Below, one piece after another: positions 2,716 to 62,386 of a DNA stretch of 64,000 bases. The translations under genes were made by a program, and so were the position numbers. A model generated the notes under the pieces. The model saw only the letters and a program-made list of their open reading frames with translations, ran no database searches and had not been told where the DNA came from. The stretch covers positions 124,001-188,000 of the IMG/VR virus record IMGVR_UViG_3300026484_000007, one strand, 5' to 3'. Position 1 is the first letter of the stretch, and each line of letters opens with the position of its first letter.

Positions 2716-2778
2716 TTTAAATCCTTTTTTTCAATTTTTTCTAACGACAAAAAAAAATGGAGAACAACTCTCCACTTT

Positions 2779-3198
2779 TTATTTCTTTTGAATCTCTTTT
2801 CTTATACTTTTAAATTTTTTAAGAGTTGTATGATACTCTTTTAAATCATCAAGATTATCAATATATTCTTTGAAAATTAATCCAAAGATGATTATTGAAA
2901 AGAAAGCAAGATAAGCACTTGCAGCACCAACAATCAAAGCATTCTTTAAAGTAATTATATCAAAAAATGATAAAATTACCAAAATTGGATTAAAGATAAC
3001 GCTTAAAAACGATACTCCGAAAATTACTAATAATGCAATTGCCGAAATATAAATAAGAAAACTAAAGATTTTTGAAAACGCCAAACAAGCAAAATCTTGA
3101 CTTTGCTTGTACTGATCGTATTCTTCATAACTCGATATTTTATCCATAAATAAAACATATCTTATAGTTTGAATGATACAGTTTTTATTTTTTAGCAC
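2779..3198 (-). CDS. hypothetical membrane protein
   Basis: Two long hydrophobic segments. Confidence 0.7.
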   Translation of the reverse strand: MLKNKNCIIQTIRYVLFMDKISSYEEYDQYKQSQDFACLAFSKIFSFLIYISAIALLVIFGVSFLSVIFNPILVILSFFDIITLKNALIVGAASAYLAFFSIIIFGLIFKEYIDNLDDLKEYHTTLKKFKSIRKEIQKK

Positions 3199-4024
3199 TT
3201 TTTCTCCTTTTGCTTTTTAGATATTTTTTAGTACGACTAAGATTTTCAATTAGTCCTTTAATTTTATTGTAAGTTGTATTACTTACTCTATAAAAATTTT
3301 TAAAACAATCTGGTCTGAATTTATCAAACCATTCCGTCGTTAAATGATAAAATTTAACTTCAAAATGATTTTCACGATCTCTACAAAAATCATTTACATC
3401 AAAATTTTCTATCTTTCTAATATATAAATTATAACATTTTTGATAAGAAAAACTATGCTTATGTTCTATAAATAAACTCCAAATAAATTCTTCGAAGTAT
3501 TTATTGTAATGTAATTTTTCTAAAACATAAAATTTTTTCCAAGTTAATTCCTTTTCAATCCATTGTATGTATTCGTCGAATAAATCCATTCTAAAAAACA
3601 TAGTCGAATATCTTCTATGCGTTTTTACTAATCTTTCATAAACAGGAATTAATGTTCCTGGTAATTGATTTTTATTAAAATAAGGAAAAGCTATTTCCCA
3701 ATTTATCCAATAAATATTCCCAACTATTGGACTGCTTGTAATATTATTAAAATTAATATGATCAGAATAAAGAATATCCAAATCAGTGTAAAAGATCTTT
3801 GAAAGATCTTTTTTGTCTCTTTTTAAAATTTTTAAAGCTTTTTGTAAAGTATAAAACTTTACCATATAATGTATTCCTTTCGATTTGAATCTTTTTTGGA
3901 TCTCTTTTGGAACACGTAAATTTAGAAAATCAAAATACTGATTACTAATCAATTGTTGAATATCTGCTTCGTATTGATAACATGGTTTGTCGTCGATAAT
4001 TCTTAAAAGTTTAAATCTTTCCAT
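3185..4024 (-). CDS. hypothetical protein, possible GT-A glycosyltransferase-like
   Basis: KFYTL...IFYTDLDILY resembles a DxD context; weak. Confidence 0.35.
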   Translation of the reverse strand: MERFKLLRIIDDKPCYQYEADIQQLISNQYFDFLNLRVPKEIQKRFKSKGIHYMVKFYTLQKALKILKRDKKDLSKIFYTDLDILYSDHINFNNITSSPIVGNIYWINWEIAFPYFNKNQLPGTLIPVYERLVKTHRRYSTMFFRMDLFDEYIQWIEKELTWKKFYVLEKLHYNKYFEEFIWSLFIEHKHSFSYQKCYNLYIRKIENFDVNDFCRDRENHFEVKFYHLTTEWFDKFRPDCFKNFYRVSNTTYNKIKGLIENLSRTKKYLKSKRRKSAKK

Positions 4025-4046
4025 TTAATCTCCTTTTTAATCTCTT

Positions 4047-4421
4047 TTAAAGATTTCTTGCAAGAATATAATGAACTCCTGTCGATAAATGTTTACATAA
4101 TTTCATCTTTTTGCAATCTGGGTTTGTTTTGTCTGGCGGTAATAATACAAAACTTGGCTCCATTAAAAGAGCATCTTTTAAATAAAAACAATATGCTTGT
4201 CTATATCTAAAATCGTGGCAATCACAATAAACCTTAATTTTAGAATTCGGTCTAAGTTTTTCCGTATTACATTCAATTTTTGCAGTGTACATTTGTGGCG
4301 CCGGTTTTGTCGTCGCCATAGTACTAATACAACTTAATTGATAACGATAAGGTTCAATATGTGTTTTAACGATTTTGATTGTTGGATCGCTTGGTTTGTT
4401 TACTCTTGATAAATCAATCAT
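4047..4421 (-). CDS. SWIM zinc-finger protein
   Basis: VYCDCHDFRYR...LCKHL (CxC...CxH). Confidence 0.8.
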   Translation of the reverse strand: MIDLSRVNKPSDPTIKIVKTHIEPYRYQLSCISTMATTKPAPQMYTAKIECNTEKLRPNSKIKVYCDCHDFRYRQAYCFYLKDALLMEPSFVLLPPDKTNPDCKKMKLCKHLSTGVHYILARNL

Positions 4422-4442
4422 TCAAGTCTCCTTTTTTAAAAT

Positions 4443-4722: not shown

Positions 4723-4726
4723 CCCT

Positions 4727-5053: not shown

Positions 5054-5062
5054 TTTCTCTCC

Positions 5063-10930: not shown

Positions 10931-12343
10931 TTAAATTTTTTTTCTAATATCTTCAAGAGAATATTCTTTTTGAATTTTACCATTTAAAAATACAGTTTCC
11001 ATCGCTGGAATTAAATTTTTATCATCAATACCTGGAATTGGATTTTGAAGACAAATTAATTTACCATTTTTATCTTTATAAACTTCAAGATAACCTTTTA
11101 ATGATTTTTTTCCAGAATCCGTAATTGGATCTTTAAAAACATCATGTCCTTTAATCTCGTTATTTTCTAAAGTTTCGATGTAACTGCATTTGCAAGCAAA
11201 ACTATAAGTATCTCTTGTTAATCCTGTTTGACCAATGTAAGTTCCTGATCCGAATACAAAAGTCTCAGCCGCTATTAATGGTAAATCTTTATATCCTTTT
11301 ACTGTAAAAGTTTCAAGAATATTTTTAATAGTATCTTTATTGATTCCATCTCCCCAAAGAATACCATATTTTGATGAAAAATATTTACTATTTGAAAATT
11401 GATCAAATACTCCATTAACAAGCATGATTTTTAGCATTTTCCCAAGAACTTCAATTGGATCCCCACTGTCTGGTCTAATTACTAATTTTTGATTAGGTCT
11501 TTCACTTAGAAGTTTTCTAATTTTACCAGATGGATTAGTAACCATATCTGTAAATTTAAACACATCATAACTATCGGCTACAAAGCTCATAATTGGTGCG
11601 TTTGGGTTTTCAAGAAGCATTCTATAAACAAATTCTTCTTCTCCATCGATCGAAGCGTTCGCTGTCGTGGTTGAATGTTCAGTAGCAAATACACTATATG
11701 AGCTAATTTTTTCATGGTAATAATCTCTACAAAATTTTAAACTGTGAAAATTATCAGTACCAAGAAAAATAGTATTATGCGCAAATCCAGAGATTGCTGC
11801 GCTTTCCACTGATGTCATACTTCTATCTCCGAAATTATGATAAGCAAATTTTGCCCATTCTGGGTCCCCGTATTTACAAAGCATATCATATACTTCTTTT
11901 GATTTCGTAGCTACTGTCGTTGGATACCACACTTTCATTAAAAGTGTTTCTACAAATCCTACTACCCACGGTACTTTTTTATCAGTACTTTCGATTAATA
12001 CCATTGGTATTTGAGCTGGAACCGCAGTTCCTTCTGGAAGAGCTTTAATTTTTATAGGTAATTTTCCATCAAGCTCTTCTGCTATATATTTCCATCCTTC
12101 ATAAGGAAATGATATCCCATGAAGATCTGCAAATTCTTTTGCTTCTTCAATCATTTCTATAGTAATTTTTTGACTTAAATATTCTTTAAGAATATATTGA
12201 AGCCCTACAAAAATCACTTCTCCATTATTATCCTGTACTCTTCTCGCTGTAAGATAATCTTGCATAAATACCATATTTTTTGGATATTGAAATGCGTGTC
12301 CATATTTATAACTATCTCCTAACATTACTACATTTACTTTCAT
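10931..12343 (-). CDS. nadV: nicotinamide phosphoribosyltransferase
   Basis: DSYK, HNFGDR, ATEHS, DSYD, IRPDSGDP, KDPITDSGKKS. Confidence 0.93.
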   Translation of the reverse strand: MKVNVVMLGDSYKYGHAFQYPKNMVFMQDYLTARRVQDNNGEVIFVGLQYILKEYLSQKITIEMIEEAKEFADLHGISFPYEGWKYIAEELDGKLPIKIKALPEGTAVPAQIPMVLIESTDKKVPWVVGFVETLLMKVWYPTTVATKSKEVYDMLCKYGDPEWAKFAYHNFGDRSMTSVESAAISGFAHNTIFLGTDNFHSLKFCRDYYHEKISSYSVFATEHSTTTANASIDGEEEFVYRMLLENPNAPIMSFVADSYDVFKFTDMVTNPSGKIRKLLSERPNQKLVIRPDSGDPIEVLGKMLKIMLVNGVFDQFSNSKYFSSKYGILWGDGINKDTIKNILETFTVKGYKDLPLIAAETFVFGSGTYIGQTGLTRDTYSFACKCSYIETLENNEIKGHDVFKDPITDSGKKSLKGYLEVYKDKNGKLICLQNPIPGIDDKNLIPAMETVFLNGKIQKEYSLEDIRKKI

Positions 12344-12382
12344 TTTTTCTCCTTTGATTGTATTTTGATTGTTTTTATAATA

Positions 12383-13477
12383 TTATAATATATTTGAAAA
12401 TTCTAAAATGATCTCTCTATGATCATCAAAAAATTTTATATAACTTCCGTCAAATGTTCTGTTTTCAATATCTTTAATTCTAATAAATTCAATTGATTCG
12501 GCATCATCAGATGCTTTAGCCACGTTCTTAATTTTTTTAATTATTTGAGAATTATTGATTTTAACTCCATGAACTATCGATAATCTTCTTCCATAAAGAC
12601 TTCTTTTTGGATGATCAAAAACCATTTTTTTATTTATTTTATCAATATATTCAGAGTATTCTGATAAATCAATTCCTGTTTCTTCTTTTAATTCTCTCAG
12701 CGCTCCAGTTAATGAATTCTCGTTATTATTTAAAAATCCTCCTGGTAATGCATGTGCATCTTTTCCTGGATTATATTTTCTTTTAATACAAAGAACTTCA
12801 TCTTGCAAAAATAATACAAAATCCACAGTTACGAAATTTAAAGTTTCCGGATAAGGATAACAAGAAAATTTTAATTTTTCCTGTTCAAGATATTCTTCTT
12901 CGGATTTTAAAAATCCTTGAAGTTCGTCGTATCTATCCATAATAACATTCATAGTGCTTTCTGGTATAAATTTAACCATATGCTCTTCGAAAACTTCTTT
13001 TCTTAAATAACTCAATTTTTCTCTGATATCTATACTCGAAAGATTATCATGTTTATTATCAACATGTGACATATTAAATGATGGAAATAAATTTAAATAA
13101 TATGAACTTTCATCTTTATTATGTCCATATAGATAAATATTTTCATCAGATATATCATTATTAAAAGAATACGAATAAATCTCGTCGCAAATCGTTTCGC
13201 GAACATTTTCAGCCCATTTATTATCATTGCACAAATAATCAGGAATTGATATTATCTTTATTTTCTCTTGAATTTTTTCATCAAAAGAATTAATGATCAT
13301 TTCTCTGATTTCAGTGAATTTAAATGGATTTTTATAACTTAAATGTCTATCACCACTTCCTACTAAAATTAATATGTAATCCATATTATCTTCTATCATT
13401 TCATTTATGATCTCTTTATGAGCATTATGGAATGGTTGAAATCTTCCAATCAATACTCCTAATTTTTCTTTTTTCAT
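12383..13477 (-). CDS. nadM: bifunctional NMN adenylyltransferase / Nudix hydrolase
   Basis: GRFQPFHNAH and Nudix box GG...ALRELKEETG. Confidence 0.92.
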   Translation of the reverse strand: MKKEKLGVLIGRFQPFHNAHKEIINEMIEDNMDYILILVGSGDRHLSYKNPFKFTEIREMIINSFDEKIQEKIKIISIPDYLCNDNKWAENVRETICDEIYSYSFNNDISDENIYLYGHNKDESSYYLNLFPSFNMSHVDNKHDNLSSIDIREKLSYLRKEVFEEHMVKFIPESTMNVIMDRYDELQGFLKSEEEYLEQEKLKFSCYPYPETLNFVTVDFVLFLQDEVLCIKRKYNPGKDAHALPGGFLNNNENSLTGALRELKEETGIDLSEYSEYIDKINKKMVFDHPKRSLYGRRLSIVHGVKINNSQIIKKIKNVAKASDDAESIEFIRIKDIENRTFDGSYIKFFDDHREIILEFSNIL

Positions 13478-13917: not shown

Positions 13918-13970
13918 TCTTTCTCCTTTTTTTAATTTTTTAAATTTTTTAAATTTTTTAAATTTTTTTT

Positions 13971-14104
13971 TGAAAACTCGTGATCCTAAAACGTTGCGCT
14001 TCATTGGATACACAAAGATATATACGAGTTCTAAAAATTTTAGAACTGCTTTTATATCGCTTGTATCTAAAAAAGATGCTACGTAGAAAATCAAGTTTTT
14101 CAAA
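13971..14104. repeat. ~130-bp imperfect palindrome, copy 1
   Basis: Centre GTTCTAAAA-A-TTTTAGAAC with complementary arms; other copies at 23947, 31661 and (half) 62256. Confidence 0.85.
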
Positions 14105-14168
14105 GTTTTTTCTATAGATTTTTAGATTTTTTCTAACGACAAAAAAAGTGATCCAAAGAGGATCATTT

Positions 14169-14378
14169 TTAAAAAGGAGATTGAGAAGATCCAACCGAAT
14201 CAATTTTATTATAATTCGATGAATCATTTGATTCAGTTGTATCTAAAGTAGACATAATTCCTACAAGCACCGTGATCGATATTAATAAAAATAAAAAGAT
14301 CACAATACCTTTTGTACTTTTTGTAGATTGCTCCCACATAGTTTTTAAATTTAAATTTTCAGTTTGATTCATTTTCAT
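14169..14378 (-). CDS. small membrane protein
   Basis: One TM segment. Confidence 0.6.
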   Translation of the reverse strand: MKMNQTENLNLKTMWEQSTKSTKGIVIFLFLLISITVLVGIMSTLDTTESNDSSNYNKIDSVGSSQSPF

Positions 14379-18190: not shown

Positions 18191-18442
18191 TTAGCATATT
18201 TTATTAATATATTCTTTAGCAGAATTATACGTTTTGAAATAAATTGGTATTTCATATTTTATAACGATTTTAACATCGTCTCCGTCGATACTGTAGATTG
18301 TATATTGATCAAGATTTTCATCATAATCAATAATGAAATATTCTCTTCTTTTTTTACAAAAATAACGTTTGGTTTGAAAAATTAAATTTTTAAAATATTT
18401 AATTTTCCTTATTATGAATTCAATAATTTCTGATACCTTCAA
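18191..18442 (-). CDS. hypothetical protein
   Basis: 83-aa ORF. Confidence 0.6.
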   Translation of the reverse strand: MKVSEIIEFIIRKIKYFKNLIFQTKRYFCKKRREYFIIDYDENLDQYTIYSIDGDDVKIVIKYEIPIYFKTYNSAKEYINKIC

Positions 18443-19365
18443 TTTTTCTCCTTTAATGTTTTCAATATTTTTTTTCTTAATTCTATTATATTGATCTTTG
18501 AAAGATCAATCCACTCTGGATCATTTGGATCTTTTAAGATTTTATCAAACATGAAATTTACCACAACGTTTTCTTCGTAAGCATAAAGTCTTGCTTTGAT
18601 TTCTGGCGAATATCTTTTAAATAGTCCATTTATATCCTTATTATCTTTTAACGCTGGTTCTTGAATCTTTTTATAAACTGAATCTTTTATCGTTCTCATG
18701 TATTTCCAGAATTTATAGTATTTAGTCTTTAGCTTGAACATGAAAGGACTAACCTTATCTTTTTCTTTAATTACAGCTCCTTCGATATAATTAACCTTAT
18801 CAAAAGGTTTAACTGTATTCAAATTATTTAAAAATTGAGTCAATTCTTGATAATTATTTAAAACTGCTAATTTTTTGGGAGCTCTAATTACAATTTTATC
18901 GTTTTTATCATTCATGTATTTATTGATAAAATGTGATAAAAATAGTTTATATGCTTCATAATCCAATTCAAAATCTATAATATTTCTAACAGCGTCTAAG
19001 AAAACTAATTGAGCTTCATTGTATTCTTCGATATGTGGATCGAATTCTGGCTCAATTACTTCGAATAATAATGTAACATTTTTTTCTAAAAGCATCTCTT
19101 TTAGATCATCATCTAAATATGATTCAATCATATTATGAAATACTTCAGAATATTCACCATTAATGTTTGTCTTCGAACTGATATGAAAATGACTATCGCC
19201 ATTTTTATCAGTAAAAGCTGATAATAAACCTAAATATCCATTTGCTTTTTCAATTGCTTCCAAAGGAAAAATAAATGGATTATTTAAATTCTCTATTCTA
19301 GTATCTTCTCTTTCATTGAGATTAAAAAATTTATGATAACCTCTTGCTACAATTTTTTCAGCCAT
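18439..19365 (-). CDS. RNA ligase (Rnl1-like nucleotidyltransferase)
   Basis: ARGYHKFFN, EKANG (motif I), LFE, EGAVI, FKLK. Confidence 0.8.
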   Translation of the reverse strand: MAEKIVARGYHKFFNLNEREDTRIENLNNPFIFPLEAIEKANGYLGLLSAFTDKNGDSHFHISSKTNINGEYSEVFHNMIESYLDDDLKEMLLEKNVTLLFEVIEPEFDPHIEEYNEAQLVFLDAVRNIIDFELDYEAYKLFLSHFINKYMNDKNDKIVIRAPKKLAVLNNYQELTQFLNNLNTVKPFDKVNYIEGAVIKEKDKVSPFMFKLKTKYYKFWKYMRTIKDSVYKKIQEPALKDNKDINGLFKRYSPEIKARLYAYEENVVVNFMFDKILKDPNDPEWIDLSKINIIELRKKILKTLKEKN

Positions 19366-19420
19366 CTCTTCTCCTTATTTTTTTAATTTATGAATTTTTT
19401 CTAACGACAAAAAAAGTGAT

Positions 19421-19834
19421 CTAAAAAAGATCACATTTTTTAATTTTTACAAAAACTCTTTGAAGTAATTCTTTTTCTTCTTGAGTTCTCATATGACTAT
19501 CTAACCACGGATAAAAATAAATTTTATCATAGTTTTCCGCAGCTGTTGTATGATAAAGTTTTCCATCTTCATCTTGTTGCACTAATACAAAGAAATCAAT
19601 TTTTGGACCAAAAGCTCCAACAAGATCTGAACTATCGATCTTTAAATGATCAAGATCAAATAATGTATAGTAAAGATCTTTCAATTGAGGACTTATGAAT
19701 AAATATTCATTAGTCCCTTTTTTTGGAAATTTTAAATCTAACTCCTTAATGATCTTTTTAAGATCATTAATATCATGTTGTAGATTTAATAATTTTTTAT
19801 TTTCATTTTCTTTCGCTTGACTTGTTTGACTCAT
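19421..19834 (-). CDS. hypothetical protein
   Basis: 137-aa ORF. Confidence 0.65.
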   Translation of the reverse strand: MSQTSQAKENENKKLLNLQHDINDLKKIIKELDLKFPKKGTNEYLFISPQLKDLYYTLFDLDHLKIDSSDLVGAFGPKIDFFVLVQQDEDGKLYHTTAAENYDKIYFYPWLDSHMRTQEEKELLQRVFVKIKKCDLF

Positions 19835-23912: not shown

Positions 23913-23946
23913 TCTTTCTCCTTTTTACTTTTTAAATTTTTTTCTT

Positions 23947-24080
23947 TGAAAAACTGAGATCCTAAAACGTTGCGCTTCATTAGATACACAAAGATATATA
24001 GCAGTTCTAAAATTTTTAGAACTGCTTTTATATCGCTTGTATCTATTTTAGATGCTACATTGAAAATCAAAGTTTTCAAA
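23947..24080. repeat. ~130-bp imperfect palindrome, copy 2
   Basis: Near-identical to 13971-14104, with the same flanking motif and terminator. Confidence 0.85.
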
Positions 24081-24470
24081 AGTTTTTCTATGGATTTTTT
24101 CTAACGACAAAAAAAGTGATCCAAAGAGGATCAGTTTTTACATTTCCAGTTAATTTCGGAATTTAATTTTTTTAAAATTTTTTTAAATTTTTTAAATTTA
24201 ATTCCGTATTTTTTACAGATCTTTTTTAGATCTTTTTTAGATACATTTTTCATTTTTTCTCCTTTTTAAAATTTATTAAATTTATTAAAATTTATTATTT
24301 AGATTTACTTATATTGAATTCAAAATGCGGATTTGAAATGTAAAATATTTTATATTCCTTTTTTGGAAAAACATTTACCATTCGATAAATTCCAGAAATA
24401 TATCCTACGCCAAAACTTAAAATTATAATCAACGCAATTCTTATGACTAACTTTTGATTTTCATTTAGAT

Positions 24471-31625: not shown

Positions 31626-31660
31626 AAATTCCTCCTTAAATTTTTAAATCTTTTTTTCTT

Positions 31661-31795
31661 TGAAAACTCGTGATCCTAAAACGTTAAGCAACGATAGATA
31701 TCTAAAGATATATAGCAGTTCTAAAAATTTTAGAACTGCTTTTATATCGCTTGTATCTAAAAAAGATGCTACGTGGAAAATCAAAGTTTTCAAAA
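31661..31795. repeat. ~130-bp imperfect palindrome, copy 3
   Basis: Near-identical to copies 1 and 2. Confidence 0.85.
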
Positions 31796-31876
31796 GTTTT
31801 TTCTGACGACAAAAAAAGAAGAGTATTTATATAGCGCCCTCTTCAACGGCGCTGGATATTCAATAAAAATAAAAGA

Positions 31877-32509: not shown

Positions 32510-32652
32510 TTTTCCTCCTTTAAATTTTTACAAGAAAAATTGTTTTTAAAATAAATTAAATAAGCACGTGAAATTGTTGCTCATCTATTAATAATATATC
32601 TATATTTTCTAACGATGTTCTAAAACCTTAAATTTTTTCTAACGACAAAAAA

Positions 32653-32673
32653 ACCCTCGCATAAGCGAGGGTT
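32653..32673 (-). terminator. intrinsic terminator
   Basis: ACCCTCGC-ATAA-GCGAGGGT stem followed by a T-tract on the minus strand. Confidence 0.8.
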
Positions 32674-32680
32674 TTAAACA

Positions 32681-35312: not shown

Positions 35313-35454
35313 AATTTCTCCTTTGTGTTTCTGTTTTTATTTTCTTCGGTATTTATAATGCGCTCCAAAGATTAAGTTTAAGCGCAATTTTTTCTAACGA
35401 CAAAAAAAGCGATCTTTAAAAGATCGCTTTTAAACTATTCATATACTACCTATA

Positions 35455-36420: not shown

Positions 36421-36483
36421 TACAATTTCTCCTTTATTTTTTTAATTTTTTCTAATGACAAAAAAAATGGAGCAAAGATGAGA

Positions 36484-36765
36484 TTAAATCTCAACTTTTA
36501 CTCCATTAACTATACCATCTTTTTCCATAGCATTCCAATTTAAAATTGGAATATTTACTATTTTTTTCGCGCTATATAACTTATATAGCACGACTATAAT
36601 TTTTTCGCTTAGTCTATTTATTACAATTTCCGCGTCTTTTTCAGCCATCGGATTTGTAAAAAAAACAATAATTTCATTGTTATTTACGATGATATTTTTA
36701 AAATTTTCATCGTTTAAATTTTTGAGATTTAATAAAATCTCTTGCAAAACTTCAGATTTTTTCAT
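36484..36765 (-). CDS. hypothetical protein
   Basis: 93-aa ORF. Confidence 0.6.
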   Translation of the reverse strand: MKKSEVLQEILLNLKNLNDENFKNIIVNNNEIIVFFTNPMAEKDAEIVINRLSEKIIVVLYKLYSAKKIVNIPILNWNAMEKDGIVNGVKVEI

Positions 36766-46778: not shown

Positions 46779-46905
46779 TTCTTTATCCTTTTTTTAATTT
46801 TTTTAAGCAAATAAAATAATTTTGCGAATTCGACGATTTTCCGAACTCGCAATCAAAACACTAATTATATCTTTAAAATCTAAAGAAAAAGAAGACCTGC
46901 GAGAG

Positions 46906-47193
46906 TTATAATTTAACTCTCACCGGGTCTTCAAACCACTCCATTGTTGCGTTAGATGGAAGAATGATCTTCCATCTTTTTCTGGCAGTCGCCACTACCT
47001 CTTTTGGGTTGGTAGTGGCAAACACTGCCATGTCGCCGCTACGACCTGCAAGGCCGTAGACAGCGACTTTTATGTATTTGTCGCTGTCGTATGGTTTTAC
47101 CCATACGACAGCGACTTTAATTCCCTGAATATTTTGACTTGGCGCCTTTTGCGCCAAGTCGATTAATTCAAAAATATTTAAATTCAATTTCAT
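46906..47193 (-). CDS. small early-type protein
   Basis: Cassette promoter, SD, GC-richer. Confidence 0.7.
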   Translation of the reverse strand: MKLNLNIFELIDLAQKAPSQNIQGIKVAVVWVKPYDSDKYIKVAVYGLAGRSGDMAVFATTNPKEVVATARKRWKIILPSNATMEWFEDPVRVKL

Positions 47194-47272
47194 TCTTCCT
47201 CCTTAATTTTTTTTGCTATTAGATTATCAATGATTTAATTAATCATTATAAAATAAAAAGAAAAAGAAGAGG

Positions 47273-47539
47273 TTAGAGGTATTCGATCTTAACGATCTCC
47301 TCCTCTAAAAACACTCTTCTTTTTCTCTCTCCTCTCGGAGAGATTAAGTAGGCTTCTTTCAGCCCACCTTTCCCCGAAAGGAGATATCCCGTGCTTTTGC
47401 TGAATGCCCATTCAGCAAAAGCATTATAAATCCCGTATCCTCCCGCACTATAGTACGGGAACGGGATCACTTCCGAATTCCTTTTTTCCCAAATCAGTTC
47501 GAGCTTCCACTCGAACTGATATTTGAAATCTCTTTTCAT
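47273..47539 (-). CDS. small early-type protein
   Basis: Cassette promoter and SD. Confidence 0.7.
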   Translation of the reverse strand: MKRDFKYQFEWKLELIWEKRNSEVIPFPYYSAGGYGIYNAFAEWAFSKSTGYLLSGKGGLKEAYLISPRGERKRRVFLEEEIVKIEYL

Positions 47540-47645
47540 TCTTCCTCCTTAATTTTTTTTTGCTTAATTGATATCAATGAGGTTGTGGAAGAGTTCTAAA
47601 AATTTTAATGAAATAAAAAAAATTTTGATAAAAAGAAAGCTTGAG

Positions 47646-47930
47646 TCAAATGGCTCTTTCGAGCCATTTGACTGCCTTCTTCAAGGCTTTCACCTTGAAG
47701 TGAAGGTCGTCGACCTTCACTTTGAGCTCAAACTCTTCTGAGCTCAAAATATCCATATGCATGAGGAAGTCAACTTCCCCATGCATTTTAATATACTCGG
47801 CTTCAGCCGCTTCAAGAGCGGCTTCAGCAGCCTCAGTTTCCCTAAGAGCGGCTTTCGCCGCTCTTAGATTTTTTTTCTCTTCTTTAAGAGCGGCTTTCGC
47901 CGCTCTTAATAATTTTTCAATTTTTTCCAT
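47646..47930 (-). CDS. small helical early-type protein with an LRAAKAAL duplication
   Basis: Cassette promoter and SD. Confidence 0.7.
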   Translation of the reverse strand: MEKIEKLLRAAKAALKEEKKNLRAAKAALRETEAAEAALEAAEAEYIKMHGEVDFLMHMDILSSEEFELKVKVDDLHFKVKALKKAVKWLERAI

Positions 47931-48052
47931 TCTTCCTCCTTGAAATTTTTTTTTGCTATTAGATTATCAATGATACATAGATGTAATTCTAAAAAAAATT
48001 TTAAAAAAATTAAGAAAATTTAATAAATAAAAAATTAAGAAAAAAGCAACGG

Positions 48053-48247
48053 TTATTCCGGAGCGGGTAGCTCAACTACCTCAACTCCGTAACTAGGGTT
48101 GCTTTCTTCTTGGAGGGCGCGGACATATGCCTCCGCGTCCTCCTTTTCCCAGAATACTTTGGATACGGAACTGATTCCGTATCCAAAGTAACCATCTACG
48201 AAGTAGTACGCTACTCCGTAGATTTTTTTATTTTCTAAATTTTCCAT
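48053..48247 (-). CDS. small early-type protein
   Basis: Cassette promoter and SD. Confidence 0.7.
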   Translation of the reverse strand: MENLENKKIYGVAYYFVDGYFGYGISSVSKVFWEKEDAEAYVRALQEESNPSYGVEVVELPAPE

Positions 48248-48357
48248 ATCTCCTCCTTAATTTTTTTTGCTATTAGATTATCAATGATACATAGATGTAA
48301 TTCTAAAAAAAATTTTAAAAAAATTAAGAAATAAAAAGAGATTGGATGATCTGGAGT

Positions 48358-48561
48358 TTAAAACTCCAAGTCATCCAAATCATCTAATTCTAGCAGCTTC
48401 TCTAAAGCTGCTGCTTTTTCAGCAGCAGCTTTTGCTACTTTAGCCTCATACGAGGCCAAAATTGCGGCTTCTTTAGCCGCTTTTTTTGCTGCTGCAGCTT
48501 TTGCTGCAGCTGTTTCTGAGGCTCTTTGAGCCTCAGAAACTCTTTCAATTAGAAATTTCAT
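48358..48561 (-). CDS. Ala/Lys-rich microprotein with acidic tail
   Basis: SD-preceded ATG at 48561. Confidence 0.7.
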   Translation of the reverse strand: MKFLIERVSEAQRASETAAAKAAAAKKAAKEAAILASYEAKVAKAAAEKAAALEKLLELDDLDDLEF

Positions 48562-48681
48562 TCTTTCCTCCTTAAATTTTTTTTGCTTAATTGATATCAA
48601 TGATATAAAACGAAGTTTTAAAATAATTTACATGTACTTAAATATACTTAAATACTTAAAATTGCTCACAAAGGATATAAT

Positions 48682-49317
48682 ATGTTTTTTATAAATGAAA
48701 TGACGGAGAAAAAAATAAATAATATCGCTAATATTATTATCGAATTAAATACTCTTTTAGAAGAAGCGGCAGGGAAATACTCAATGCCTTTAACTGGAGT
48801 TCCAAAAGCAGGAAAAAGTTTAATATCAGGTGGTTTAGATCATGTTTATAAAAAAAGCAAAGATAAATATTTTATAGAGAAATTATCGCCGGATATGGAA
48901 GGAAAATGGACTTTTGATACCGGAAAGTTAGAATTAGCTAGAGAAATGAAAAATAAATTAAAAGACAAAAATGAGTTTTTTGATGATAGATTCGTAAAAA
49001 TAAAAAATACTCATATTCCTAATTTAATTAAAAATTTTGATAAAACTGTGTTTGATTTGGGAGGTATTCCTTCGAAAGAAAACGAGAGTTTTATCGATAA
49101 TATACAAAAAAGTTCAATTTTAAATGATAAAAAATTCGTACCAGTCGTTCTTTCTCCTGATAGACAGAAATCGTACGAATGGCAAAAGTTTTTCAATGAA
49201 AAATTCGAAACCGATCCTATAATTTATACTCCAAATTGGAATTTTAAAAAAGATATAAAACAACAATCGATATATCATGCTAATGAACTTCTTAACCGAA
49301 TCCAAAAAAGATTATAA
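48682..49317 (+). CDS. P-loop ATPase of the Csx3-associated (AAA-type) family
   Basis: GVPKAGKS Walker A, SPDMEGKW (cf. CPDGEGxW, from recall), VFDLGG Walker B; convergent with csx3. Confidence 0.7.
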   Translation: MFFINEMTEKKINNIANIIIELNTLLEEAAGKYSMPLTGVPKAGKSLISGGLDHVYKKSKDKYFIEKLSPDMEGKWTFDTGKLELAREMKNKLKDKNEFFDDRFVKIKNTHIPNLIKNFDKTVFDLGGIPSKENESFIDNIQKSSILNDKKFVPVVLSPDRQKSYEWQKFFNEKFETDPIIYTPNWNFKKDIKQQSIYHANELLNRIQKRL

Positions 49318-49338
49318 ATAAAAAAACATAATCCCTGC

Positions 49339-49635
49339 TTACACAGGGATTATATCTCCGACTTTTACGTCGGGTGTGTGGCTTTCAGCCACAATTCCCC
49401 CGCTTAGGCGAGGGTCGTAGCACGCCACGAATGGCGTGCAATGGTACTCATGTACCATCGCGGCAAAGAGCCATATCGGCCCTCTACCGCTTAAAATTAT
49501 ACCTACCCCAGGTTCAACCTGAGGCAATCTTTTAATTGCCTCAGGTAACTCCGCAGGGGTAATAACCCCACTTGTGAGCTCAAAGCTCACAAGTGCAATT
49601 TTATCGCTTACTTCTTTTACATCATATTTTATCAT
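49339..49635 (-). CDS. csx3: CRISPR ring nuclease Csx3/Crn3
   Basis: GVITPAEL, GIILSGRGPIWLFA..H.YH, YDPRL.GGIV..SH. Confidence 0.9.
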   Translation of the reverse strand: MIKYDVKEVSDKIALVSFELTSGVITPAELPEAIKRLPQVEPGVGIILSGRGPIWLFAAMVHEYHCTPFVACYDPRLSGGIVAESHTPDVKVGDIIPV

Positions 49636-49701
49636 CGTCTTTCTCCTTTTGATTTTTTTGCTATTAGATTATCAATGATATACAAATCAGTTCTAAAAAA
49701 A

Positions 49702-49842
49702 TCACCAGAAGTTTTTATTCTTGTACTTCTGGCGATTGTATTTCTTAGAGTTCTTTTGAACTCTAGTATGGGGCTTTAATCCGCCCCATGTCTGACGAGT
49801 TTTGATCTCGTCTTTTTTGATTTTAATTGAAAATTTTTTCAT
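49702..49842 (-). CDS. small basic peptide (46 aa)
   Basis: Manual translation MKKFSIKIKKDEIKTRQTWGGLKPHTRVQKNSKKYNRQKYKNKNFW; promoter and SD present. Confidence 0.7.
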   Translation of the reverse strand: MKKFSIKIKKDEIKTRQTWGGLKPHTRVQKNSKKYNRQKYKNKNFW

Positions 49843-49998
49843 AATTTCTCCTTTTGATTTTTTTTAATTTTTCTGATAAATATATATCAATGTCTAAAAA
49901 AATTATTATAAAAATAAAAACTTAACAACTCTAAGATGTGTTTTTTCCGCTTTTGCGTCTGAGTTTAGCACCTCTCAGTCCGTCAGCCTCTTGGCTTC

Positions 49999-50151
49999 TT
50001 ATTCAGAAGTCGCAAGAACAGCTGCTTCGAAAGCAGCCTCAAGAGGCATTTCAGCCTCTTGAACTGCCTGAAGCATCGCTGCTACAAGCGCTTCAGAAGG
50101 GGCATTAAGCCCCTTCGAAGCCAAGAAAGCTAAAATCGCTTTCTTGTCCAT
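49999..50151 (-). CDS. Ala-rich microprotein (50 aa)
   Basis: Manual translation MDKKAILAFLASKGLNAPSEALVAAMLQAVQEAEMPLEAAFEAAVLATSE; promoter and SD present. Confidence 0.7.
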   Translation of the reverse strand: MDKKAILAFLASKGLNAPSEALVAAMLQAVQEAEMPLEAAFEAAVLATSE

Positions 50152-50379
50152 TTTCCTCCTTTATAATTTTTTTGCTAATTAAATATCTAATAAAACTAAA
50201 GCAGTTCTAAAAATTCTTTAAAAATAAAAATGAAGGAGGGAGAGAGGAAAGAGAAAGAAAAGAGAGGGAAAATGTCGCTATATTTCTAATAAAACTTTTT
50301 AGTTCTAAAATCGATTTTAAAATAATTTAAAAATAATTTAAAAAATAAATTTTTTTGATAAATAAAAGTCTGGCGAGAG

Positions 50380-50697
50380 TTATAATAACTCCTTCCAAAC
50401 TTCGTGCAAATCGTTTGCTGCTTTATATAATTTTTTTTTCAATTTCTTTAATTTTTTGATTTTGCCTCTATTTACACGAAGCTCGTCCTCGAGCTTCGTT
50501 TTATGGCGGGAATACTCCGCCATTTCTTCCCCAGAGGCTCCTACCTCTGGGAAGTTTAATCTTTCATTCTGCAACCAGCAGAACTTGAGGTGCTCTCGCA
50601 CCTCTTTTAATTCTTTTAATTCGCATTTTACTTTCTCAGCCTCATATCTGAGGCTATTTTCATAATCGAATACTTCATTTTTTAAATCTTTTCTCAT
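50380..50697 (-). CDS. small coiled-coil early-type protein
   Basis: Cassette promoter and SD. Confidence 0.7.
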   Translation of the reverse strand: MRKDLKNEVFDYENSLRYEAEKVKCELKELKEVREHLKFCWLQNERLNFPEVGASGEEMAEYSRHKTKLEDELRVNRGKIKKLKKLKKKLYKAANDLHEVWKELL

Positions 50698-50772
50698 TTC
50701 TTTCTCCTTTGATTTTTTTTGCTAATTAAATATCTAATAAACCAAAAGCAGTTCTAAAAATTCTTTAAAAAT

Positions 50773-50908
50773 AAAAAAGATAGGAGGAGTCCGCATAAGC
50801 GAACTCCCGGACCTCAAAGGGTCACGTAGCTTTATGACACAGATATGGTTACTCGTTCCGAAGAACTTTCACCATATCGAAAGGTGCCATAAAGCTACCC
50901 TATCTACT
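50773..50908 (-). ncRNA. putative structured ncRNA 2 (~135 nt, multi-way junction, loop E, UUCG tetraloop)
   Basis: Closing stem AGAUAGG/CCUAUCU, 15-bp and 8-bp stems, GAAA/GAGUA internal loop, GUUC-UUCG-GAAC, two more hairpins, U-tract; own promoter. Confidence 0.8.
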
Positions 50909-50944: not shown

Positions 50945-51000
50945 TAATTTAAACCATTTTTTCTAACGACAAAAAAACGCGTGAGATCTTAAATAGATCA

Positions 51001-51546
51001 TCACGCGCGAATATCGATTAAGAACTTTTTTTCTTTGAGAGTATTTACTCTCATTTGAAGTTCCTTAATCGTTTTTGGATCTTCAAAAGATCCTTCTGTA
51101 ACTTCGCAAGAACTTGTCTCTAGACTTTCGATAATTTCTTCATCTAGGACCTTTCTTGTTTTTTTAGAAGAATCTTTTTTCGATTCTTTTTTTACTTTTT
51201 CAATTTTGAGAGATTCTTCTATATACAATCTCTCATAACCCTCAGCTAATCTGAGGGTTTCAATAGCAAGATCTTTGAAGTAAGCTGCTTTGCTTTTAGC
51301 AGCTCTCACTTCATTAATCTTTTCATGGCGCTCTTTTTTAAGCGCTTTTTTCAAAGATTTGATCTCCTCGTTACGTTTTTCAATAACGCTTTTTAGGAGA
51401 TCAATCTCCTTTTTTTGGTCCTCAATTTTTTTATCGCGGCTGAGGATCATTTCCGCTAACTCTTTTGGCGAATACTTTGTCGCCAGTTCAATAACGCGTT
51501 TGAACTTATCAAATACGTTATTGATTTTTTCCTCTAATTTTTTCAT
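51001..51546 (-). CDS. coiled-coil protein
   Basis: 181-aa ORF with promoter motif upstream. Confidence 0.7.
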   Translation of the reverse strand: MKKLEEKINNVFDKFKRVIELATKYSPKELAEMILSRDKKIEDQKKEIDLLKSVIEKRNEEIKSLKKALKKERHEKINEVRAAKSKAAYFKDLAIETLRLAEGYERLYIEESLKIEKVKKESKKDSSKKTRKVLDEEIIESLETSSCEVTEGSFEDPKTIKELQMRVNTLKEKKFLIDIRA

Positions 51547-52329: not shown

Positions 52330-52437
52330 AAAAATTCCTTTTTGATTTTTTATAATTATTTTCTTTTTTTCTAGTTTTTTTCTGACGACAAAAAAAGTGA
52401 TCTAAAAAAGATCACTTTTTATAATTTCTATAATTTT

Positions 52438-56756: not shown

Positions 56757-56833
56757 TTTATCTCCTTTTTCTAATGACAAAAAAATTAAATAGTAAAGCT
56801 TTAACTTAAGCTCTACTATTTATATCTGTTGAA

Positions 56834-59780: not shown

Positions 59781-60812
59781 CTAAAGATCCTTTCTTTGAG
59801 CAATAAGATCAATAATTTTTGATATCGTAGCAATAAAATGAAAATTCTTCATCTTTACGATATCTATTTGATTATACATTTCTATTAAAATCGATTTCGT
59901 TCCGAAATCTATATATTCAGAATCTATTAATTTTTTATAAATAAAATCATAATTCAATAAAAGATCTTCTTTTAAAATTTTAAGAATGTATTCATAATAT
60001 TGACTAAAATGTGAATCACTTTTTGAATTTTTATTTATTTCATTAATTTTTGCTTTATCTAAATTATTTAAATAATTGAATAAATATTCCAAAGTTTGGA
60101 TTATGTATTCTTCATTTCCTGTAAGATTTAAAGCTTTATTTGGATCAAATATAAATTCCCCAGTTACGCTATTAACTTCAAGGTTACTGATTAATTCTCT
60201 TAGACCTCTAACTAAATTTAATTTTACGAATGATTTTAATAATTCTTCATCGTATTTTACATTTTCAGTTTCTAGAATTTTTTTAACTCTATTTAAAGTT
60301 TGGATCTCATCAAGATCCTTAAAATGTAATCTATAATTAAATCTAGTAATCAGTGCATTATCAAGCTTTTCTGGATTATTAGTCGTCGCAAGAAAAGCAG
60401 TGTTATGCTGATATTTTTCAAGTGGCCCATCTTTTAAAACTACTTGAGCTTGTTGACTTAATCTATCAATTTCTTCAATTATTACTAATTTTTGCTTTGA
60501 TTGTAAAGCTCTTGCTTGCAACCAACTTTGTAATTTATCAATATCTTCTACTTTTCTTCCAAGAATAAAAATATCATTTGGATGTTTGATAATTTTGGCT
60601 TGCATAATTTTATTTAAAGAAGTCTTTCCGAATCCTGCTGGACCGTAACTTAAAACATTTCCTTGTATGAATTCATTATTATAAAATTTTACAAAAATAT
60701 CCTTGATATACTCTGGATCTTTTCCCTCGCCATTTAACGTACTTGGAAAAATTAAATCGTCCGGAGTTCTTGGACGATGTTTTTCAAACCACGATTTATA
60801 AACTTCTGCCAT
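59781..60812 (-). CDS. clamp loader (RFC small subunit / gp44-like AAA+)
   Basis: WFEKHRP, GPAGFGKTS, IIEEIDRL, ALITRF. Confidence 0.9.
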   Translation of the reverse strand: MAEVYKSWFEKHRPRTPDDLIFPSTLNGEGKDPEYIKDIFVKFYNNEFIQGNVLSYGPAGFGKTSLNKIMQAKIIKHPNDIFILGRKVEDIDKLQSWLQARALQSKQKLVIIEEIDRLSQQAQVVLKDGPLEKYQHNTAFLATTNNPEKLDNALITRFNYRLHFKDLDEIQTLNRVKKILETENVKYDEELLKSFVKLNLVRGLRELISNLEVNSVTGEFIFDPNKALNLTGNEEYIIQTLEYLFNYLNNLDKAKINEINKNSKSDSHFSQYYEYILKILKEDLLLNYDFIYKKLIDSEYIDFGTKSILIEMYNQIDIVKMKNFHFIATISKIIDLIAQRKDL

Positions 60813-60907
60813 TTTTTAATCCTTTATTTTTTTATCTGCTAGCAATTATATCTTTTGATTCTTATTTATAACACTTATATTTATGCTGCTTATGCAGCTT
60901 GCAACGT

Positions 60908-62227
60908 TTACAGCACACTTAAATCTATGCCATTTAATTCTGCTGCGCAAGTAAAAGTATACTCGGTCGAATTTTTTTTAGATAACATTTGATTCACAAA
61001 GATTATATCACATGCGAATATGTATAATTTTGGATGAATTTGAACTTTAGCTTTTTTATCTTTCGCTAGTTGCTCAGTACTTTCTTGAAAATCTAAGATT
61101 TTATTTATATCTATATCCGAATAAATATTAAAGTTATCCAAATATAATCTTTTATAAAAATAATTAAGATTCGATAATCTTGCATAACTATTTCTAAGTA
61201 TCTTAATTTTATCATTATCAATAGGTACATTTACGAATATAGATGTTCCGCTTTTTCCTTCGAAAAATTTATCAGTATGAACGCCTGGATCGTTATCTCC
61301 ATATTTTAAAAATTTATAAGTACCTGGACTAAGTTTTCTTTCTTCCGCAGCATTTATCGTTGTTTTGATATACGTGCTTCCAGCTTTTTGCTGATATTCA
61401 GCAATGTTAAAATACGATTTACCTGGAATCAATGGCATTACTTTTGAATTAATACCTAACCCAAAACCAGTCAATAATATATTAAAATATTTTGATGTAA
61501 GAGTAGGATTTCCCTGGAACTTATCTCCACCAGAATCAAAAATTGAATTTAATGATTCGAAAATTACTTTAAACCCTGGAGGAGAATCACTAAAAACTAA
61601 CTCTCCAGAAAAATCGTCGAAATAAAGAATTGTTTCATCTAACACAGGAATATATGTATCTAAATAATAATTTAATAATTCTTTATCGGTAAATGTCTCT
61701 GGAAGACTAACATTGTTTACATTAATATTATGCTGAAGACTTTTATTTATATGAGAATCTAGTTTATAATTTCCATAATAAACTTTTATATTATTTAATA
61801 AAACTTCAGTAAAAAATTGATAACTGGTAAAATTTTGATTATATATTGCTTTCTTATGTAAAATATTTTCATACGTTAGACGTCGTAAAACTGCGCTAAC
61901 GCCTATAATTGATACATTAAAAATACCTGTTTCTTCGTCTCTTGATATAAATTGTATCTTTTCTGGATACAAATAAAAACTAAGACTGTCGGTGTTATTA
62001 TTTATTTTTATATTTAAATAAGCTTTTTTTGCTTGTAATAAATATAAATCAAATTCGGTAATTCCTATTTCGATCTGATAAAGATTCATTCTGTCTTTAC
62101 TAAAAAGATTTTTAGAAATTCTAAAAGAATGCACGAAATAAGAATTATTTGCATTAACCACGACATCCGGAGCTGGAACCATTTGCGCGGTAATGTTATA
62201 ATTTTTATTTACTATTTTTTTTGACAT
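60908..62227 (-). CDS. hypothetical protein (possibly structural)
   Basis: SD-preceded ATG at 62227; beta-rich. Confidence 0.6.
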   Translation of the reverse strand: MSKKIVNKNYNITAQMVPAPDVVVNANNSYFVHSFRISKNLFSKDRMNLYQIEIGITEFDLYLLQAKKAYLNIKINNNTDSLSFYLYPEKIQFISRDEETGIFNVSIIGVSAVLRRLTYENILHKKAIYNQNFTSYQFFTEVLLNNIKVYYGNYKLDSHINKSLQHNINVNNVSLPETFTDKELLNYYLDTYIPVLDETILYFDDFSGELVFSDSPPGFKVIFESLNSIFDSGGDKFQGNPTLTSKYFNILLTGFGLGINSKVMPLIPGKSYFNIAEYQQKAGSTYIKTTINAAEERKLSPGTYKFLKYGDNDPGVHTDKFFEGKSGTSIFVNVPIDNDKIKILRNSYARLSNLNYFYKRLYLDNFNIYSDIDINKILDFQESTEQLAKDKKAKVQIHPKLYIFACDIIFVNQMLSKKNSTEYTFTCAAELNGIDLSVL

Positions 62228-62255
62228 TTTATCTCCTTTTATTTTTTTAACCGCA

Positions 62256-62319
62256 AAAAAACTTGATTTTCTATGTAGCATCTTTTTTAGATACTAAGGA
62301 TATATACGAGTTCTAAAAT
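62256..62319. repeat. half copy (one arm, inverted) of the ~130-bp palindrome
   Basis: ACTTGATTTTCTATGTAGCATCTTTTTTAGATAC is the reverse complement (one mismatch) of the right arm of copy 1. Confidence 0.75.
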
Positions 62320-62386
62320 TTTCTATAGATTTTTTCTGACGACAAAAAAATTGCTCGGTTAACGAGCAATTTTTATTTTATCTTTT

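What the first reader, a model, noticed from the sequence alone, without database searches (positions are those of the whole stretch)
2735..62350. T7-GTCGTTAG-A5/6 motif at operon junctions (about 12 copies)
Seen on the plus strand as TTTTTCT(A/G)A(C/T)GACAAAAAAA near 2738, 14130, 19398, 24098, 31799, 32636, 35390, 36448, 50960, 52378, 56768 and 62333. On the coding strand it usually forms the U-tract of a terminator hairpin, followed by a near-invariant GTC(G/A)T(T/C)AG, upstream of the next gene. Intrinsic terminators do not need a conserved 8-mer after the U-tract. Inference: a terminator-coupled promoter for the phage RNAP, or an antitermination or processing site.
Basis: partly seen in the sequence, partly recalled or inferred. 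Interest (0 to 1): 0.6.

Follow-up and report, generated by a model that had tools for sequence, protein, structure and literature searches.

The report
Jumbo-phage terminators with conserved tail box
An uncultured 272-kb hydrothermal-vent phage that encodes its own RNA polymerases ends most of its transcription units with a variable hairpin, exactly seven T's and an almost invariant GTCGTTAG-AAAAAA box; this is a new version of the conserved-sequence terminators already mapped in phage phiKZ, not a promoter.

Summary
All 12 listed copies exist in the window (chance expectation 0.36). The whole 272.6-kb phage genome has 35 exact and about 42 recognisable copies. Every copy is intergenic, points the same way as the gene upstream, and directly abuts a stable hairpin whose stem sequence varies. 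The conserved block is T7-GTC(G/a)T(T/c)AG-A6.

Its distribution is that of a terminator. It is present at convergent gene ends and absent from all four divergent junctions. There, and after 25 of the 42 copies, a different conserved bipartite element (TTTAGAAC...) sits where a promoter should.

Related vent-phage contigs keep the box while the hairpin stems are replaced. More distant relatives keep only T-run plus GTC.

The phage encodes two sets of split beta/beta' RNA polymerase subunits. The experimentally mapped phiKZ terminators (hairpin-TTAT-KYYGT) have the same layout, and GTCGT fits KYYGT.

My reading is a lineage-specific, sequence-extended intrinsic terminator whose tail is read by the phage transcription machinery. 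A second role as a start site for about 9 genes that follow a copy directly cannot be excluded. No RNA data exist for this phage, so no RNA ends were tested.

The parts
2735..2780 (-). Terminator module: hairpin 2752-2780, T7, GTCGTTAG, A6 (21-mer 2735-2755). It lies 25 nt upstream of the start of the RNAP beta'-N gene (1471-2715).
   Evidence: fold -12.7 kcal/mol
14127..14170 (-). Terminator module (21-mer 14127-14147, hairpin 14143-14170), followed by a composite of divergent TTTAGAAC arms.
19395..19441 (-). Terminator module (21-mer 19395-19415, hairpin 19409-19441). The SD and start of ORF 18439-19365 follow directly.
24095..24139 (-). Terminator module (21-mer 24095-24115, hairpin 24111-24139), followed by a composite of divergent arms.
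31797..31853 (-). Terminator module, variant GTCGTCAG (21-mer 31797-31817). Two mutually exclusive hairpins lie upstream: GAAGAG/CTCTTC abutting the T7, or GCGCC/GGCGC at 31833-31853. A composite of arms follows.
   Evidence: The same hairpin is seen at genome 122625 and in relative L065.
32633..32675 (-). Terminator module (21-mer 32633-32653, hairpin 32650-32675). A forward TTTAGAAC element starts 8 nt after the box.
35388..35431 (-). Terminator module (21-mer 35388-35408, hairpin 35405-35431).
   Evidence: Unchanged in a 96.9%-identical strain.
36446..36506 (-). Terminator module, variant GTCATTAG (21-mer 36446-36466, hairpin 36467-36506). The SD and start of ORF 36157-36420 follow directly.
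50957..51008 (-). Terminator module (21-mer 50957-50977, hairpin 50977-51008). A forward TTTAGAAC element starts 13 nt after the box.
52376..52420 (-). Terminator module, variant GTCGTCAG (21-mer 52376-52396, hairpin 52392-52420). The orthologous site in relative L011 keeps the box with an unrelated stem.
56765..56822 (-). Terminator module, variant GTCATTAG-A5 (21-mer 56765-56785, hairpin 56787-56822). The A-run runs straight into GGAG and a start codon; this is the tightest case.
62330..62374 (-). Terminator module, variant GTCGTCAG (21-mer 62330-62350, hairpin 62346-62374). A forward TTTAGAAC arm starts 12 nt after the box and precedes ORF 60908-62281.

Best explanation
The motif is the invariant 3' tail of a genome-wide family of intrinsic transcription terminators. 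The phage is an uncultured jumbo phage that encodes two phiKZ-type split multisubunit RNA polymerases.

Each unit has three parts:
1. An RNA hairpin in which only the structure is conserved.
2. A U-tract of exactly seven.
3. A 14-nt box in the DNA just downstream (GTCGTTAG-A6).

Shown here: the position, orientation, hairpin and conservation of the units.

Inferred: the hairpin and U7 release the transcript, and the box is read sequence-specifically by the phage transcription machinery. That could be the polymerase itself holding the downstream duplex, or a phage factor bound there. The invariant G after U7 and the locally GC-rich GTCG, in a 27% GC genome, would fix the pause and release point. 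The T-run plus GTC part is old, because it is shared with more distant relatives and resembles T-rich-G-Y-Y in phiKZ. The TTAG-A6 part is specific to this lineage. It may also serve as an A-tract or insulator in front of the promoters that usually follow.
For: - Copy number far exceeds chance: 12 copies in the window against 0.36 expected, and 35 exact or 42 degenerate copies in the genome against 0 for the reversed-pattern control.
- All copies are intergenic and co-oriented with the upstream gene. The strand flips wherever the genes flip.
- All 42 copies abut a hairpin. Mean folding energy is -16.0 kcal/mol against -4.6 for shuffles, and each stem position shows four to six different pair types.
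- The T-run is exactly 7 in 29 of 35 copies.
- The motif is present at convergent ends (genome 53.3/53.7k, 71.0k, 77.5k, 216.4k) and absent from the four divergent junctions.
- It occurs in the structural module (tail sheath at 27.3-29.3k) as well as in the replication module.
- Separate promoter-like elements follow 25 of 42 copies.
- Relatives at about 70-76% nucleotide identity keep the box at orthologous sites with unrelated stems. A strain at 96.9% identity keeps two copies unchanged.
- More distant relatives (ligase 47-50% identical) keep hairpin, T6-9 and GTC.
- There are two beta and two beta' gene sets.
- Precedent: 61 phiKZ terminators mapped by 3'-end sequencing share hairpin-TTAT-KYYGT (PMC10914365). 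I checked this on the phiKZ sequence. Phage 201phi2-1 has the same motif (PMC11512511).
Against: - No RNA 3' ends could be examined.
- About 9 copies sit 16-35 nt before a start codon with no other promoter in between. Those genes need either read-through or initiation at the motif.
- A few sense-oriented hairpin and T-run sites lack the box, so the box is not obligatory for a terminator-like structure.
- AR9 and phiR1-37, which also encode multisubunit polymerases, show no such box.
- The match of GTCGT to KYYGT has a chance probability of roughly 1 in 128 per register.
- Nothing identifies the molecule that reads the box.
Confidence: 0.6

Rival explanations
1. Dual terminator and promoter. 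The G after T7 would be a transcription start for the non-virion phage polymerase, so that polymerase ends one unit and starts the next at the same place. GTCGTTAG-A6 would then be a conserved initial transcribed sequence.
For: - About 9 copies abut an SD and start codon with no room for another promoter. In the tightest case the A-run runs into GGAG-N-ATG, which would leave the SD intact if the start lies at or before the A-run.
- The phiKZ late promoter is only TATG with G as +1, and it depends on downstream sequence (PMC4666361).
- The conserved phiKZ terminator tail contains TTATG.
Against: - The motif is absent from all four divergent junctions and never occurs without a hairpin and an upstream gene.
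- It is present at convergent ends.
- Independent promoter-like elements follow 25 of 42 copies.
- The tested phiKZ late promoter P119L lies at a divergent junction with no hairpin, so the phiKZ analogy does not require coupling.
Confidence: 0.17
2. RNA-level tag acting after read-through. The 21-nt U7-GUCGUUAG-A6 in read-through transcripts would be a processing or binding site. One possible partner is the short RNAs expected from the backward-pointing promoter arms, which would contain the exact complement. Pairing would give a 21-bp duplex for an RNase III-type cut.
For: - 20 of 42 copies have a promoter-like arm 49-142 nt downstream pointing back into the motif.
- The conserved length of 21 nt is about two helical turns.
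- A fixed sequence is what a trans-acting partner would need.
Against: - 22 copies have no such arm.
- More distant relatives keep only T-run plus GTC, not the 21-mer.
- The U7/A6 stem itself is too weak to fold. This rests on nearest-neighbour reasoning and was not computed separately.
- There is no evidence that the backward arms fire.
- There are no Rfam matches.
Confidence: 0.08
3. Upstream or insulator element of the following promoters. T7, A6 and a second A-run about 11 bp further on would form phased A/T tracts, and TTAGAA would be a copy of the promoter's upstream hexamer. The element would bend DNA or bind a regulator for the downstream TTTAGAAC promoters.
For: - A forward arm starts 8-26 nt after the box in 6 copies, and a composite follows in 19.
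- There is a second A-rich block at +19 to +23.
- The TTAGAAAAAA-like unit is repeated in tandem after some copies (genome 53332, 215571, 216421).
- The box shares TTAGAA with the promoter-like TTTAGAAC.
Against: - 16 copies have no arm downstream.
- Promoter arms at divergent junctions work without the box.
- The deeply conserved part is T-run plus GTC, not the A-run.
Confidence: 0.1
4. Hitch-hiking sequence of a terminator cassette that spread by duplication or gene conversion, with no function of its own.
For: Several hairpin families recur almost identically: GTGATC...GATCAC about 15 times, CCCTCGC...GCGAGGG about 7 times, and GGAGTTGTGATC... about 6 times.
Against: - Many stems are unique, yet all carry the same box.
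- Orthologous sites in relatives have replaced stems but retain the box.
- The box is an island of identity in otherwise diverged spacers.
Confidence: 0.05

Closest known systems
Conserved intrinsic terminator motif of phiKZ (61 sites) and 201phi2-1 (motif A, 59 sites), mapped by ONT-cappable-seq (PMC10914365, PMC11512511)
   Same: - The phage is a jumbo phage with two split multisubunit RNA polymerases.
- Dozens of terminators share a fixed sequence that extends past the hairpin.
- The layout is hairpin, then a T-rich tract, then G-Y-Y-G-T. GTCGT fits KYYGT in the same register.
- Bidirectional use occurs at convergent genes.
   Different: - In phiKZ the hairpin sequence itself is conserved (CCYCCCC...GGGRRGG) and the T-rich tract is TTAT.
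- Here the stems vary freely, the tract is exactly T7, and the conserved tail is longer (8-mer plus A6).
- Sequence relatedness of the phages is very low: beta' is about 24-27% identical to any cultured phage.
Terminator-then-promoter cassettes annotated in Yersinia phage phiR1-37 (NC_016163)
   Same: - Intergenic units consist of a hairpin terminator followed 16-30 nt later by a conserved early promoter.
- Some terminators sit directly before a ribosome-binding site with no promoter.
   Different: - phiR1-37 has a conserved stem family (CCCTATATCC...).
- It has no GTC box after the T-rich tail.
- Its promoter is ATATATTAT-like, not TTTAGAAC-like.
Sequence-specific termination signals: T7 RNA polymerase class II signal (ATCTGTT plus U-run); Pol I T-rich element with a downstream Reb1/TTF-I roadblock (both from general knowledge)
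   Same: Termination depends on a fixed DNA or RNA sequence next to a T-rich release element. The Pol I analogy would explain a box placed just downstream of the release site.
   Different: Those systems have no obligatory hairpin. No recognising protein is known here. This is a resemblance recalled from memory, not a test.
PeSL (promoter-early stem-loop) cassettes of T4-type phages (from general knowledge)
   Same: Repeated intergenic modules combine stem-loops and promoters, and they probably spread by recombination.
   Different: PeSLs are defined by a sigma-70 early promoter between stem-loops. They have no conserved box after the U-tract.

Membership tests
Canonical intrinsic (Rho-independent) terminator | Stable stem-loop immediately followed by a U-tract | tested here: met
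   42 of 42 copies. Mean folding energy is -16.0 kcal/mol against -4.6 for shuffles. T7 abuts the stem.
Canonical intrinsic (Rho-independent) terminator | Lies downstream of a stop codon, co-oriented with the gene | tested here: met
   All copies are intergenic, mostly 12-90 nt after the upstream stop, and the strand follows the gene strand.
Canonical intrinsic (Rho-independent) terminator | RNA 3' ends map within the U-tract | not testable with these tools
phiKZ-type conserved terminator motif | Host phage encodes split multisubunit virion and non-virion RNA polymerases | tested here: met
   Two Rpb2_6 and two or three Rpb1 matches in separate ORFs.
phiKZ-type conserved terminator motif | Conserved stem sequence CCYCCCC...GGGRRGG | tested here: not met
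   Stems are diverse: GTGATC, CCCTCGC, GCTCG, GCGCGTGA and others.
phiKZ-type conserved terminator motif | T-rich tract followed by KYYGT | tested here: met
   T7 is followed by GTCGT in 32 of 35 copies. The phiKZ sites were checked. The chance of such a fit is about 1 in 128 per register.
phiKZ-family early (virion polymerase) promoter | Extended AT-rich conserved motif upstream of operons, including divergent junctions, and independent of a hairpin | tested here: not met
   Absent from the four divergent junctions. Always attached to a hairpin and an upstream gene.
Sigma-70-type promoter (TTGTCG as a -35 element) | A -10 hexamer 16-18 bp downstream | tested here: not met
   Positions +21 to +26 are A-rich with no T-A...T pattern. 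Individual copies were checked by eye.
Lambda-type nut / boxA-boxB antitermination site | Lies between a promoter and the terminators it overrides; boxB hairpin follows boxA | tested here: not met
   The box lies after the terminator hairpin, not before it, and no conserved hairpin follows it.
REP/RAYT-type or MITE repeat | Conserved palindrome sequence recognised by a transposase | tested here: not met
   The palindrome sequence is not conserved, only the flank is. No bacterial genome shows multiple copies. Transposase genes were not searched for.

The most novel reading that the evidence does not exclude
The T-run plus GTC(GTTAG) tail is a dedicated termination or recycling signal read in the downstream duplex DNA. 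It would be the same signal that appears in degenerate form as TTAT-G-Y-Y-G-T in phiKZ and 201phi2-1. That would make it a polymerase-family-specific terminator code. It might also let the phage polymerases and the host polymerase respond differently to the same site.
Probability: 0.22. Interest if true: 0.7.

Novelty: new variant of a known kind. Interest (0 to 1): 0.45.

Why it matters
How the non-canonical, sigma-less RNA polymerases of jumbo phages stop transcription is essentially unstudied. For phiKZ only a conserved terminator motif has been reported.

A second, very distant lineage has the same layout, but with free stems, a fixed U7 and a longer invariant tail. This suggests the sequence after the U-tract carries information in its own right, and it gives a clean substrate for testing that: mutate the box and keep the hairpin.

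Practically, the motif, together with the TTTAGAAC elements, lets one lay out the transcription units of an uncultured 272-kb vent phage from sequence alone.

Tried and rejected
- **RNA evidence.** The Rfam scans were split around it. Comparison of loci L288-L291 was cut before the homologous place. That intergenic stretch was left unstudied.
- **Public collections.** The exact 20-mer and a degenerate 19-mer in IMG/VR gave nothing or single chance hits. The metagenome scan gave mostly single chance hits plus three true relatives. The bacterial and archaeal genome scan gave only single scattered hits, so this is not a host-genome motif.
- **Other searches that found nothing.** The search for related loci with beta'-N found nothing. 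Megablast against cultured phages found nothing. The genome search could not reach the relatives' records.
- **Sigma-70 promoter reading** (TTGTCG as a -35 element): rejected, because there is no -10 at the right spacing.
- **AR9-type late promoter** (AACA-N6-TA/G): absent on either strand of the motif, by eye and using the consensus.
- **U7/A6 hairpin:** rejected as too weak, by reasoning only.
- **Other jumbo phages.** AR9 and phiR1-37 terminators have no GTC box. The supplementary tables of the phiKZ and 201phi2-1 papers, which would show whether late starts coincide with terminator TTATG, are not held.
- **Gene annotation.** Pfam and PHROGs on 20 large ORFs of the presumed structural region gave almost nothing beyond a tail sheath.


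Full report
**What the window is.** The window is bases 124001-188000 of a 272,602-bp IMG/VR virus record. The record is 97% complete and 27% GC. The DNA is held by hydrothermal-vent metagenome runs. Nearly all genes in the window lie on the minus strand.

The window encodes replication and nucleotide-metabolism functions: a RecJ-like nuclease, two helicases, an ATP-dependent ligase, NAMPT, NUDIX and a radical-SAM protein. It also encodes an N-terminal fragment of RNA polymerase beta'. Genome-wide there are two beta-like and two or three beta'-like ORFs. This is the split virion and non-virion polymerase arrangement of phiKZ-type jumbo phages.

No cultured phage is close. The best beta' hits are 24-27% identical, phiR1-37 among them, and there is no nucleotide match.

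**The observation.** On the coding strand each is a hairpin followed by T7, GTC(G/A)T(T/C)AG and A5-6.

The genome holds 35 exact copies on both strands. The backwards control pattern has none. About 42 copies appear when degenerate ones are included.

The logo:
- The T-run is exactly seven in 29 of 35 copies.
- G, T and C are invariant, followed by G (32) or A (3), T, T (29) or C (6), then A and G.
- A6 follows in 33 of 35 copies, then usually T.
- A second A-rich block lies about 11 bp further on.

The core 8-mer hardly occurs outside this context.

**Anatomy and distribution.**
- Every copy is intergenic and points the same way as the upstream gene. This includes short runs of genes on the opposite strand.
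- All copies abut a hairpin. Mean folding energy is -16.0 kcal/mol against -4.6 for shuffled controls.
- The stems are diverse, with four to six pair types at each stem position. Some stem families recur.
- Many hairpins have an A-run upstream and so look bidirectional.
- Copies lie both in the presumed structural region (tail sheath at 27.3-29.3k) and in the replication region.
- The motif is present at convergent gene ends and absent from all four divergent junctions.

**What the promoters look like instead.** A second repeat family is far more promoter-like. Its conserved upstream element is TTTAGAAC(T). About 17-19 bp further on lies a TATCTA, TATTTAAT or TATATAAAT-like element. It occurs about 66 times in intergenic DNA.
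- It often occurs as two back-to-back, outward-facing arms forming a palindromic composite of about 130 nt.
- At the true divergent junction near genome 188.2k, the two arms face the two diverging genes.
- Single forward arms directly precede a ribosome-binding site and a start codon.

Of the 42 terminator copies:
- 19 are followed by such a composite.
- 6 are followed by a forward arm 8-26 nt after the box.
- 1 (genome 77538) is followed only by an arm pointing back into it.
- 16 are followed by none. About 9 of these 16 run straight into a ribosome-binding site.

So the usual intergenic unit is terminator, then box, then promoter or promoters. The box is not needed to explain initiation except in those roughly 9 cases. 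No -10-like element lies at sigma-70 spacing from the TTGTCG that the motif contains.

**Relatives.** A metagenome scan with the motif retrieved three contigs from the same vent project that are true relatives: L011, L065 and L111.
- They are 70-76% identical to this genome in genes and syntenic with it.
- They carry the same T7-GTC(G/A)TTAG-A5/6 after hairpins with unrelated stems.
- At orthologous intergenic sites the box is an island of identity.
- A strain at 96.9% identity keeps two copies unchanged.

More distant relatives were found through the ligase, which is 47-50% identical. They have the same gene order, including RecJ, ligase and the beta'/beta genes. They keep hairpin, T6-9 and GTC(G/A/C), but not the A-run (L159 and L285).

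Four other relatives show nothing similar (L141, L145, L286, L287). No bacterial genome shows multiple copies.

The deep, conserved part is therefore the T-run plus GTC. TTAG-A6 is an extension specific to this lineage.

**Comparison with what is known.** In phiKZ, ONT-cappable-seq mapped 133 termination regions. Sixty-one of them are intrinsic terminators that share hairpin-TTAT-KYYGT (PMC10914365). Phage 201phi2-1 has the same motif at 59 sites (PMC11512511).

I verified the phiKZ layout on its sequence. After the stem comes (C)TTAT, then G in 12 of 18 sites, then mostly pyrimidines. GTCGT fits KYYGT in the same register. That fit is suggestive but weak, with a chance of about 1 in 128.

The phiKZ tail also contains TATG, which is the late-promoter consensus with G as +1 (PMC4666361 and PMC7618050). 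However, the tested late promoter P119L lies at a divergent junction with no hairpin.

phiR1-37 has annotated terminator-then-promoter cassettes but no GTC box. AR9 terminators have long T-runs and no box. AR9 promoter consensuses do not match the motif. Rfam has no match in the window.

**Mechanism.**
- Shown: the position, orientation, hairpin, fixed U7 and selective conservation of the box.
- Inferred: the hairpin and U7 release the RNA. The box lies where the polymerase holds downstream duplex DNA at the moment of release. It is too sequence-specific, and too conserved across lineages, to act through duplex stability alone.
- I therefore take it to be read by the phage transcription machinery, either a polymerase subunit or a bound factor, to fix or strengthen termination. 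The invariant G after a pyrimidine 3' end fits the general pause rule for multisubunit polymerases; this is from general knowledge.
- The A-tracts may in addition shape the DNA in front of the following promoters.
- Confidence that this is a terminator-linked signal rather than a promoter is about 0.6.
- The rivals are a dual terminator and start site, an RNA-level tag possibly paired with RNAs from the backward arms, an upstream element of the following promoters, and a hitch-hiking cassette sequence. They are listed with their tests in the Rival explanations section.

**Limits.**
- Gene calls outside the tool's ORF lists are my own simple longest-ORF calls. Single distances to stops and starts can therefore be off.

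**Verdict.** The conserved tail is a new variant of the conserved-sequence terminators already known from phiKZ-type jumbo phages. It is of moderate interest, and higher if the box proves to be a polymerase-specific termination signal.

Noticed in passing
window about 13960-14100, 23930-24080, 31650-31790 (composites); single forward arm ending near 62317; genome-wide about 66 intergenic copies: A second, larger repeat family of promoter-like elements. TTTAGAAC(T) is followed 17-19 bp later by a TATCTA- or TATCCA-like element. They often occur as two outward-facing arms forming an imperfect palindrome of about 130 nt. At a true divergent junction (genome 188.2k) the arms face the two genes. 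In co-directional regions one arm points back into the upstream terminator, which would give short RNAs antisense to the box.
   Followed up: partly
window 4721, 32624, 37130, 47600, 49697, 50211, 50309, 50758, 50943 (minus strand); genome 53580, 215746, 215964, 216596, 217325: A variant promoter class: TTTAGAACT, about 14 nt, then TTAGATAT(A/T)TAA(A/T)TAGCA. Some copies are followed by SD and ATG of small genes. Others are followed by tight hairpins with UUCG or GAAA loops and no ORF, which may be phage non-coding RNAs. The elements are conserved in relatives L065, L011 and L159.
   Followed up: partly
window 46800-50800: A region of higher GC (about 32%) with many GC-rich hairpins on the plus strand, duplicated stems (47842 and 47884), several small ORFs and five closely spaced promoter-like elements. 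It has not been interpreted.
   Followed up: no
window 31818-31853; genome 122625 region; L065 2560-2610: The same 3' UTR element occurs three times and is conserved in a relative. It can form two mutually exclusive hairpins, GCGCC/GGCGC or GAAGAG/CTCTTC, and the second of these abuts the T7. This could be a switchable terminator.
   Followed up: no
whole genome; window examples 943, 4951, 19418, 24218, 35411, 52399: GATC is 2.4 times over-represented, and AGATCT and GGATCC about 3.2 times. GATC-(A/T)4-8-GATC palindromes occur 119 times, many of them inside genes. There is a tandem array of them at genome 89064-89166.
   Followed up: partly
window 24805-25941 (radical SAM/SPASM), 10931-13477 (NAMPT, NMNAT-NUDIX); genome 83419-84807 (QueC); relatives L141, L143, L145: Genes suggesting 7-deazaguanine DNA modification (QueC, radical SAM; PTPS and GTP cyclohydrolase I in relatives), NAD salvage, and ThyX in relatives.
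   Followed up: no
genome 53332, 215571, 216421, 235310 (outside the window): After some copies the 3' half of the box (TTAGAAAAAA or TTAGATAAAA) is repeated two or three times in tandem at about 10-bp phasing. The box shares TTAGAA with the promoter-like TTTAGAAC.
   Followed up: no
It was left unstudied and no letters of it were sent to any search tool.
   Followed up: no
L289 (ENA assembly, 272,083-bp contig): An independent assembly of essentially the same phage. It is 99.84% identical over 5.7 kb, with one 9-base gap that shortens an ORF from 124 to 121 aa. This supports the genome length and completeness.
   Followed up: partly
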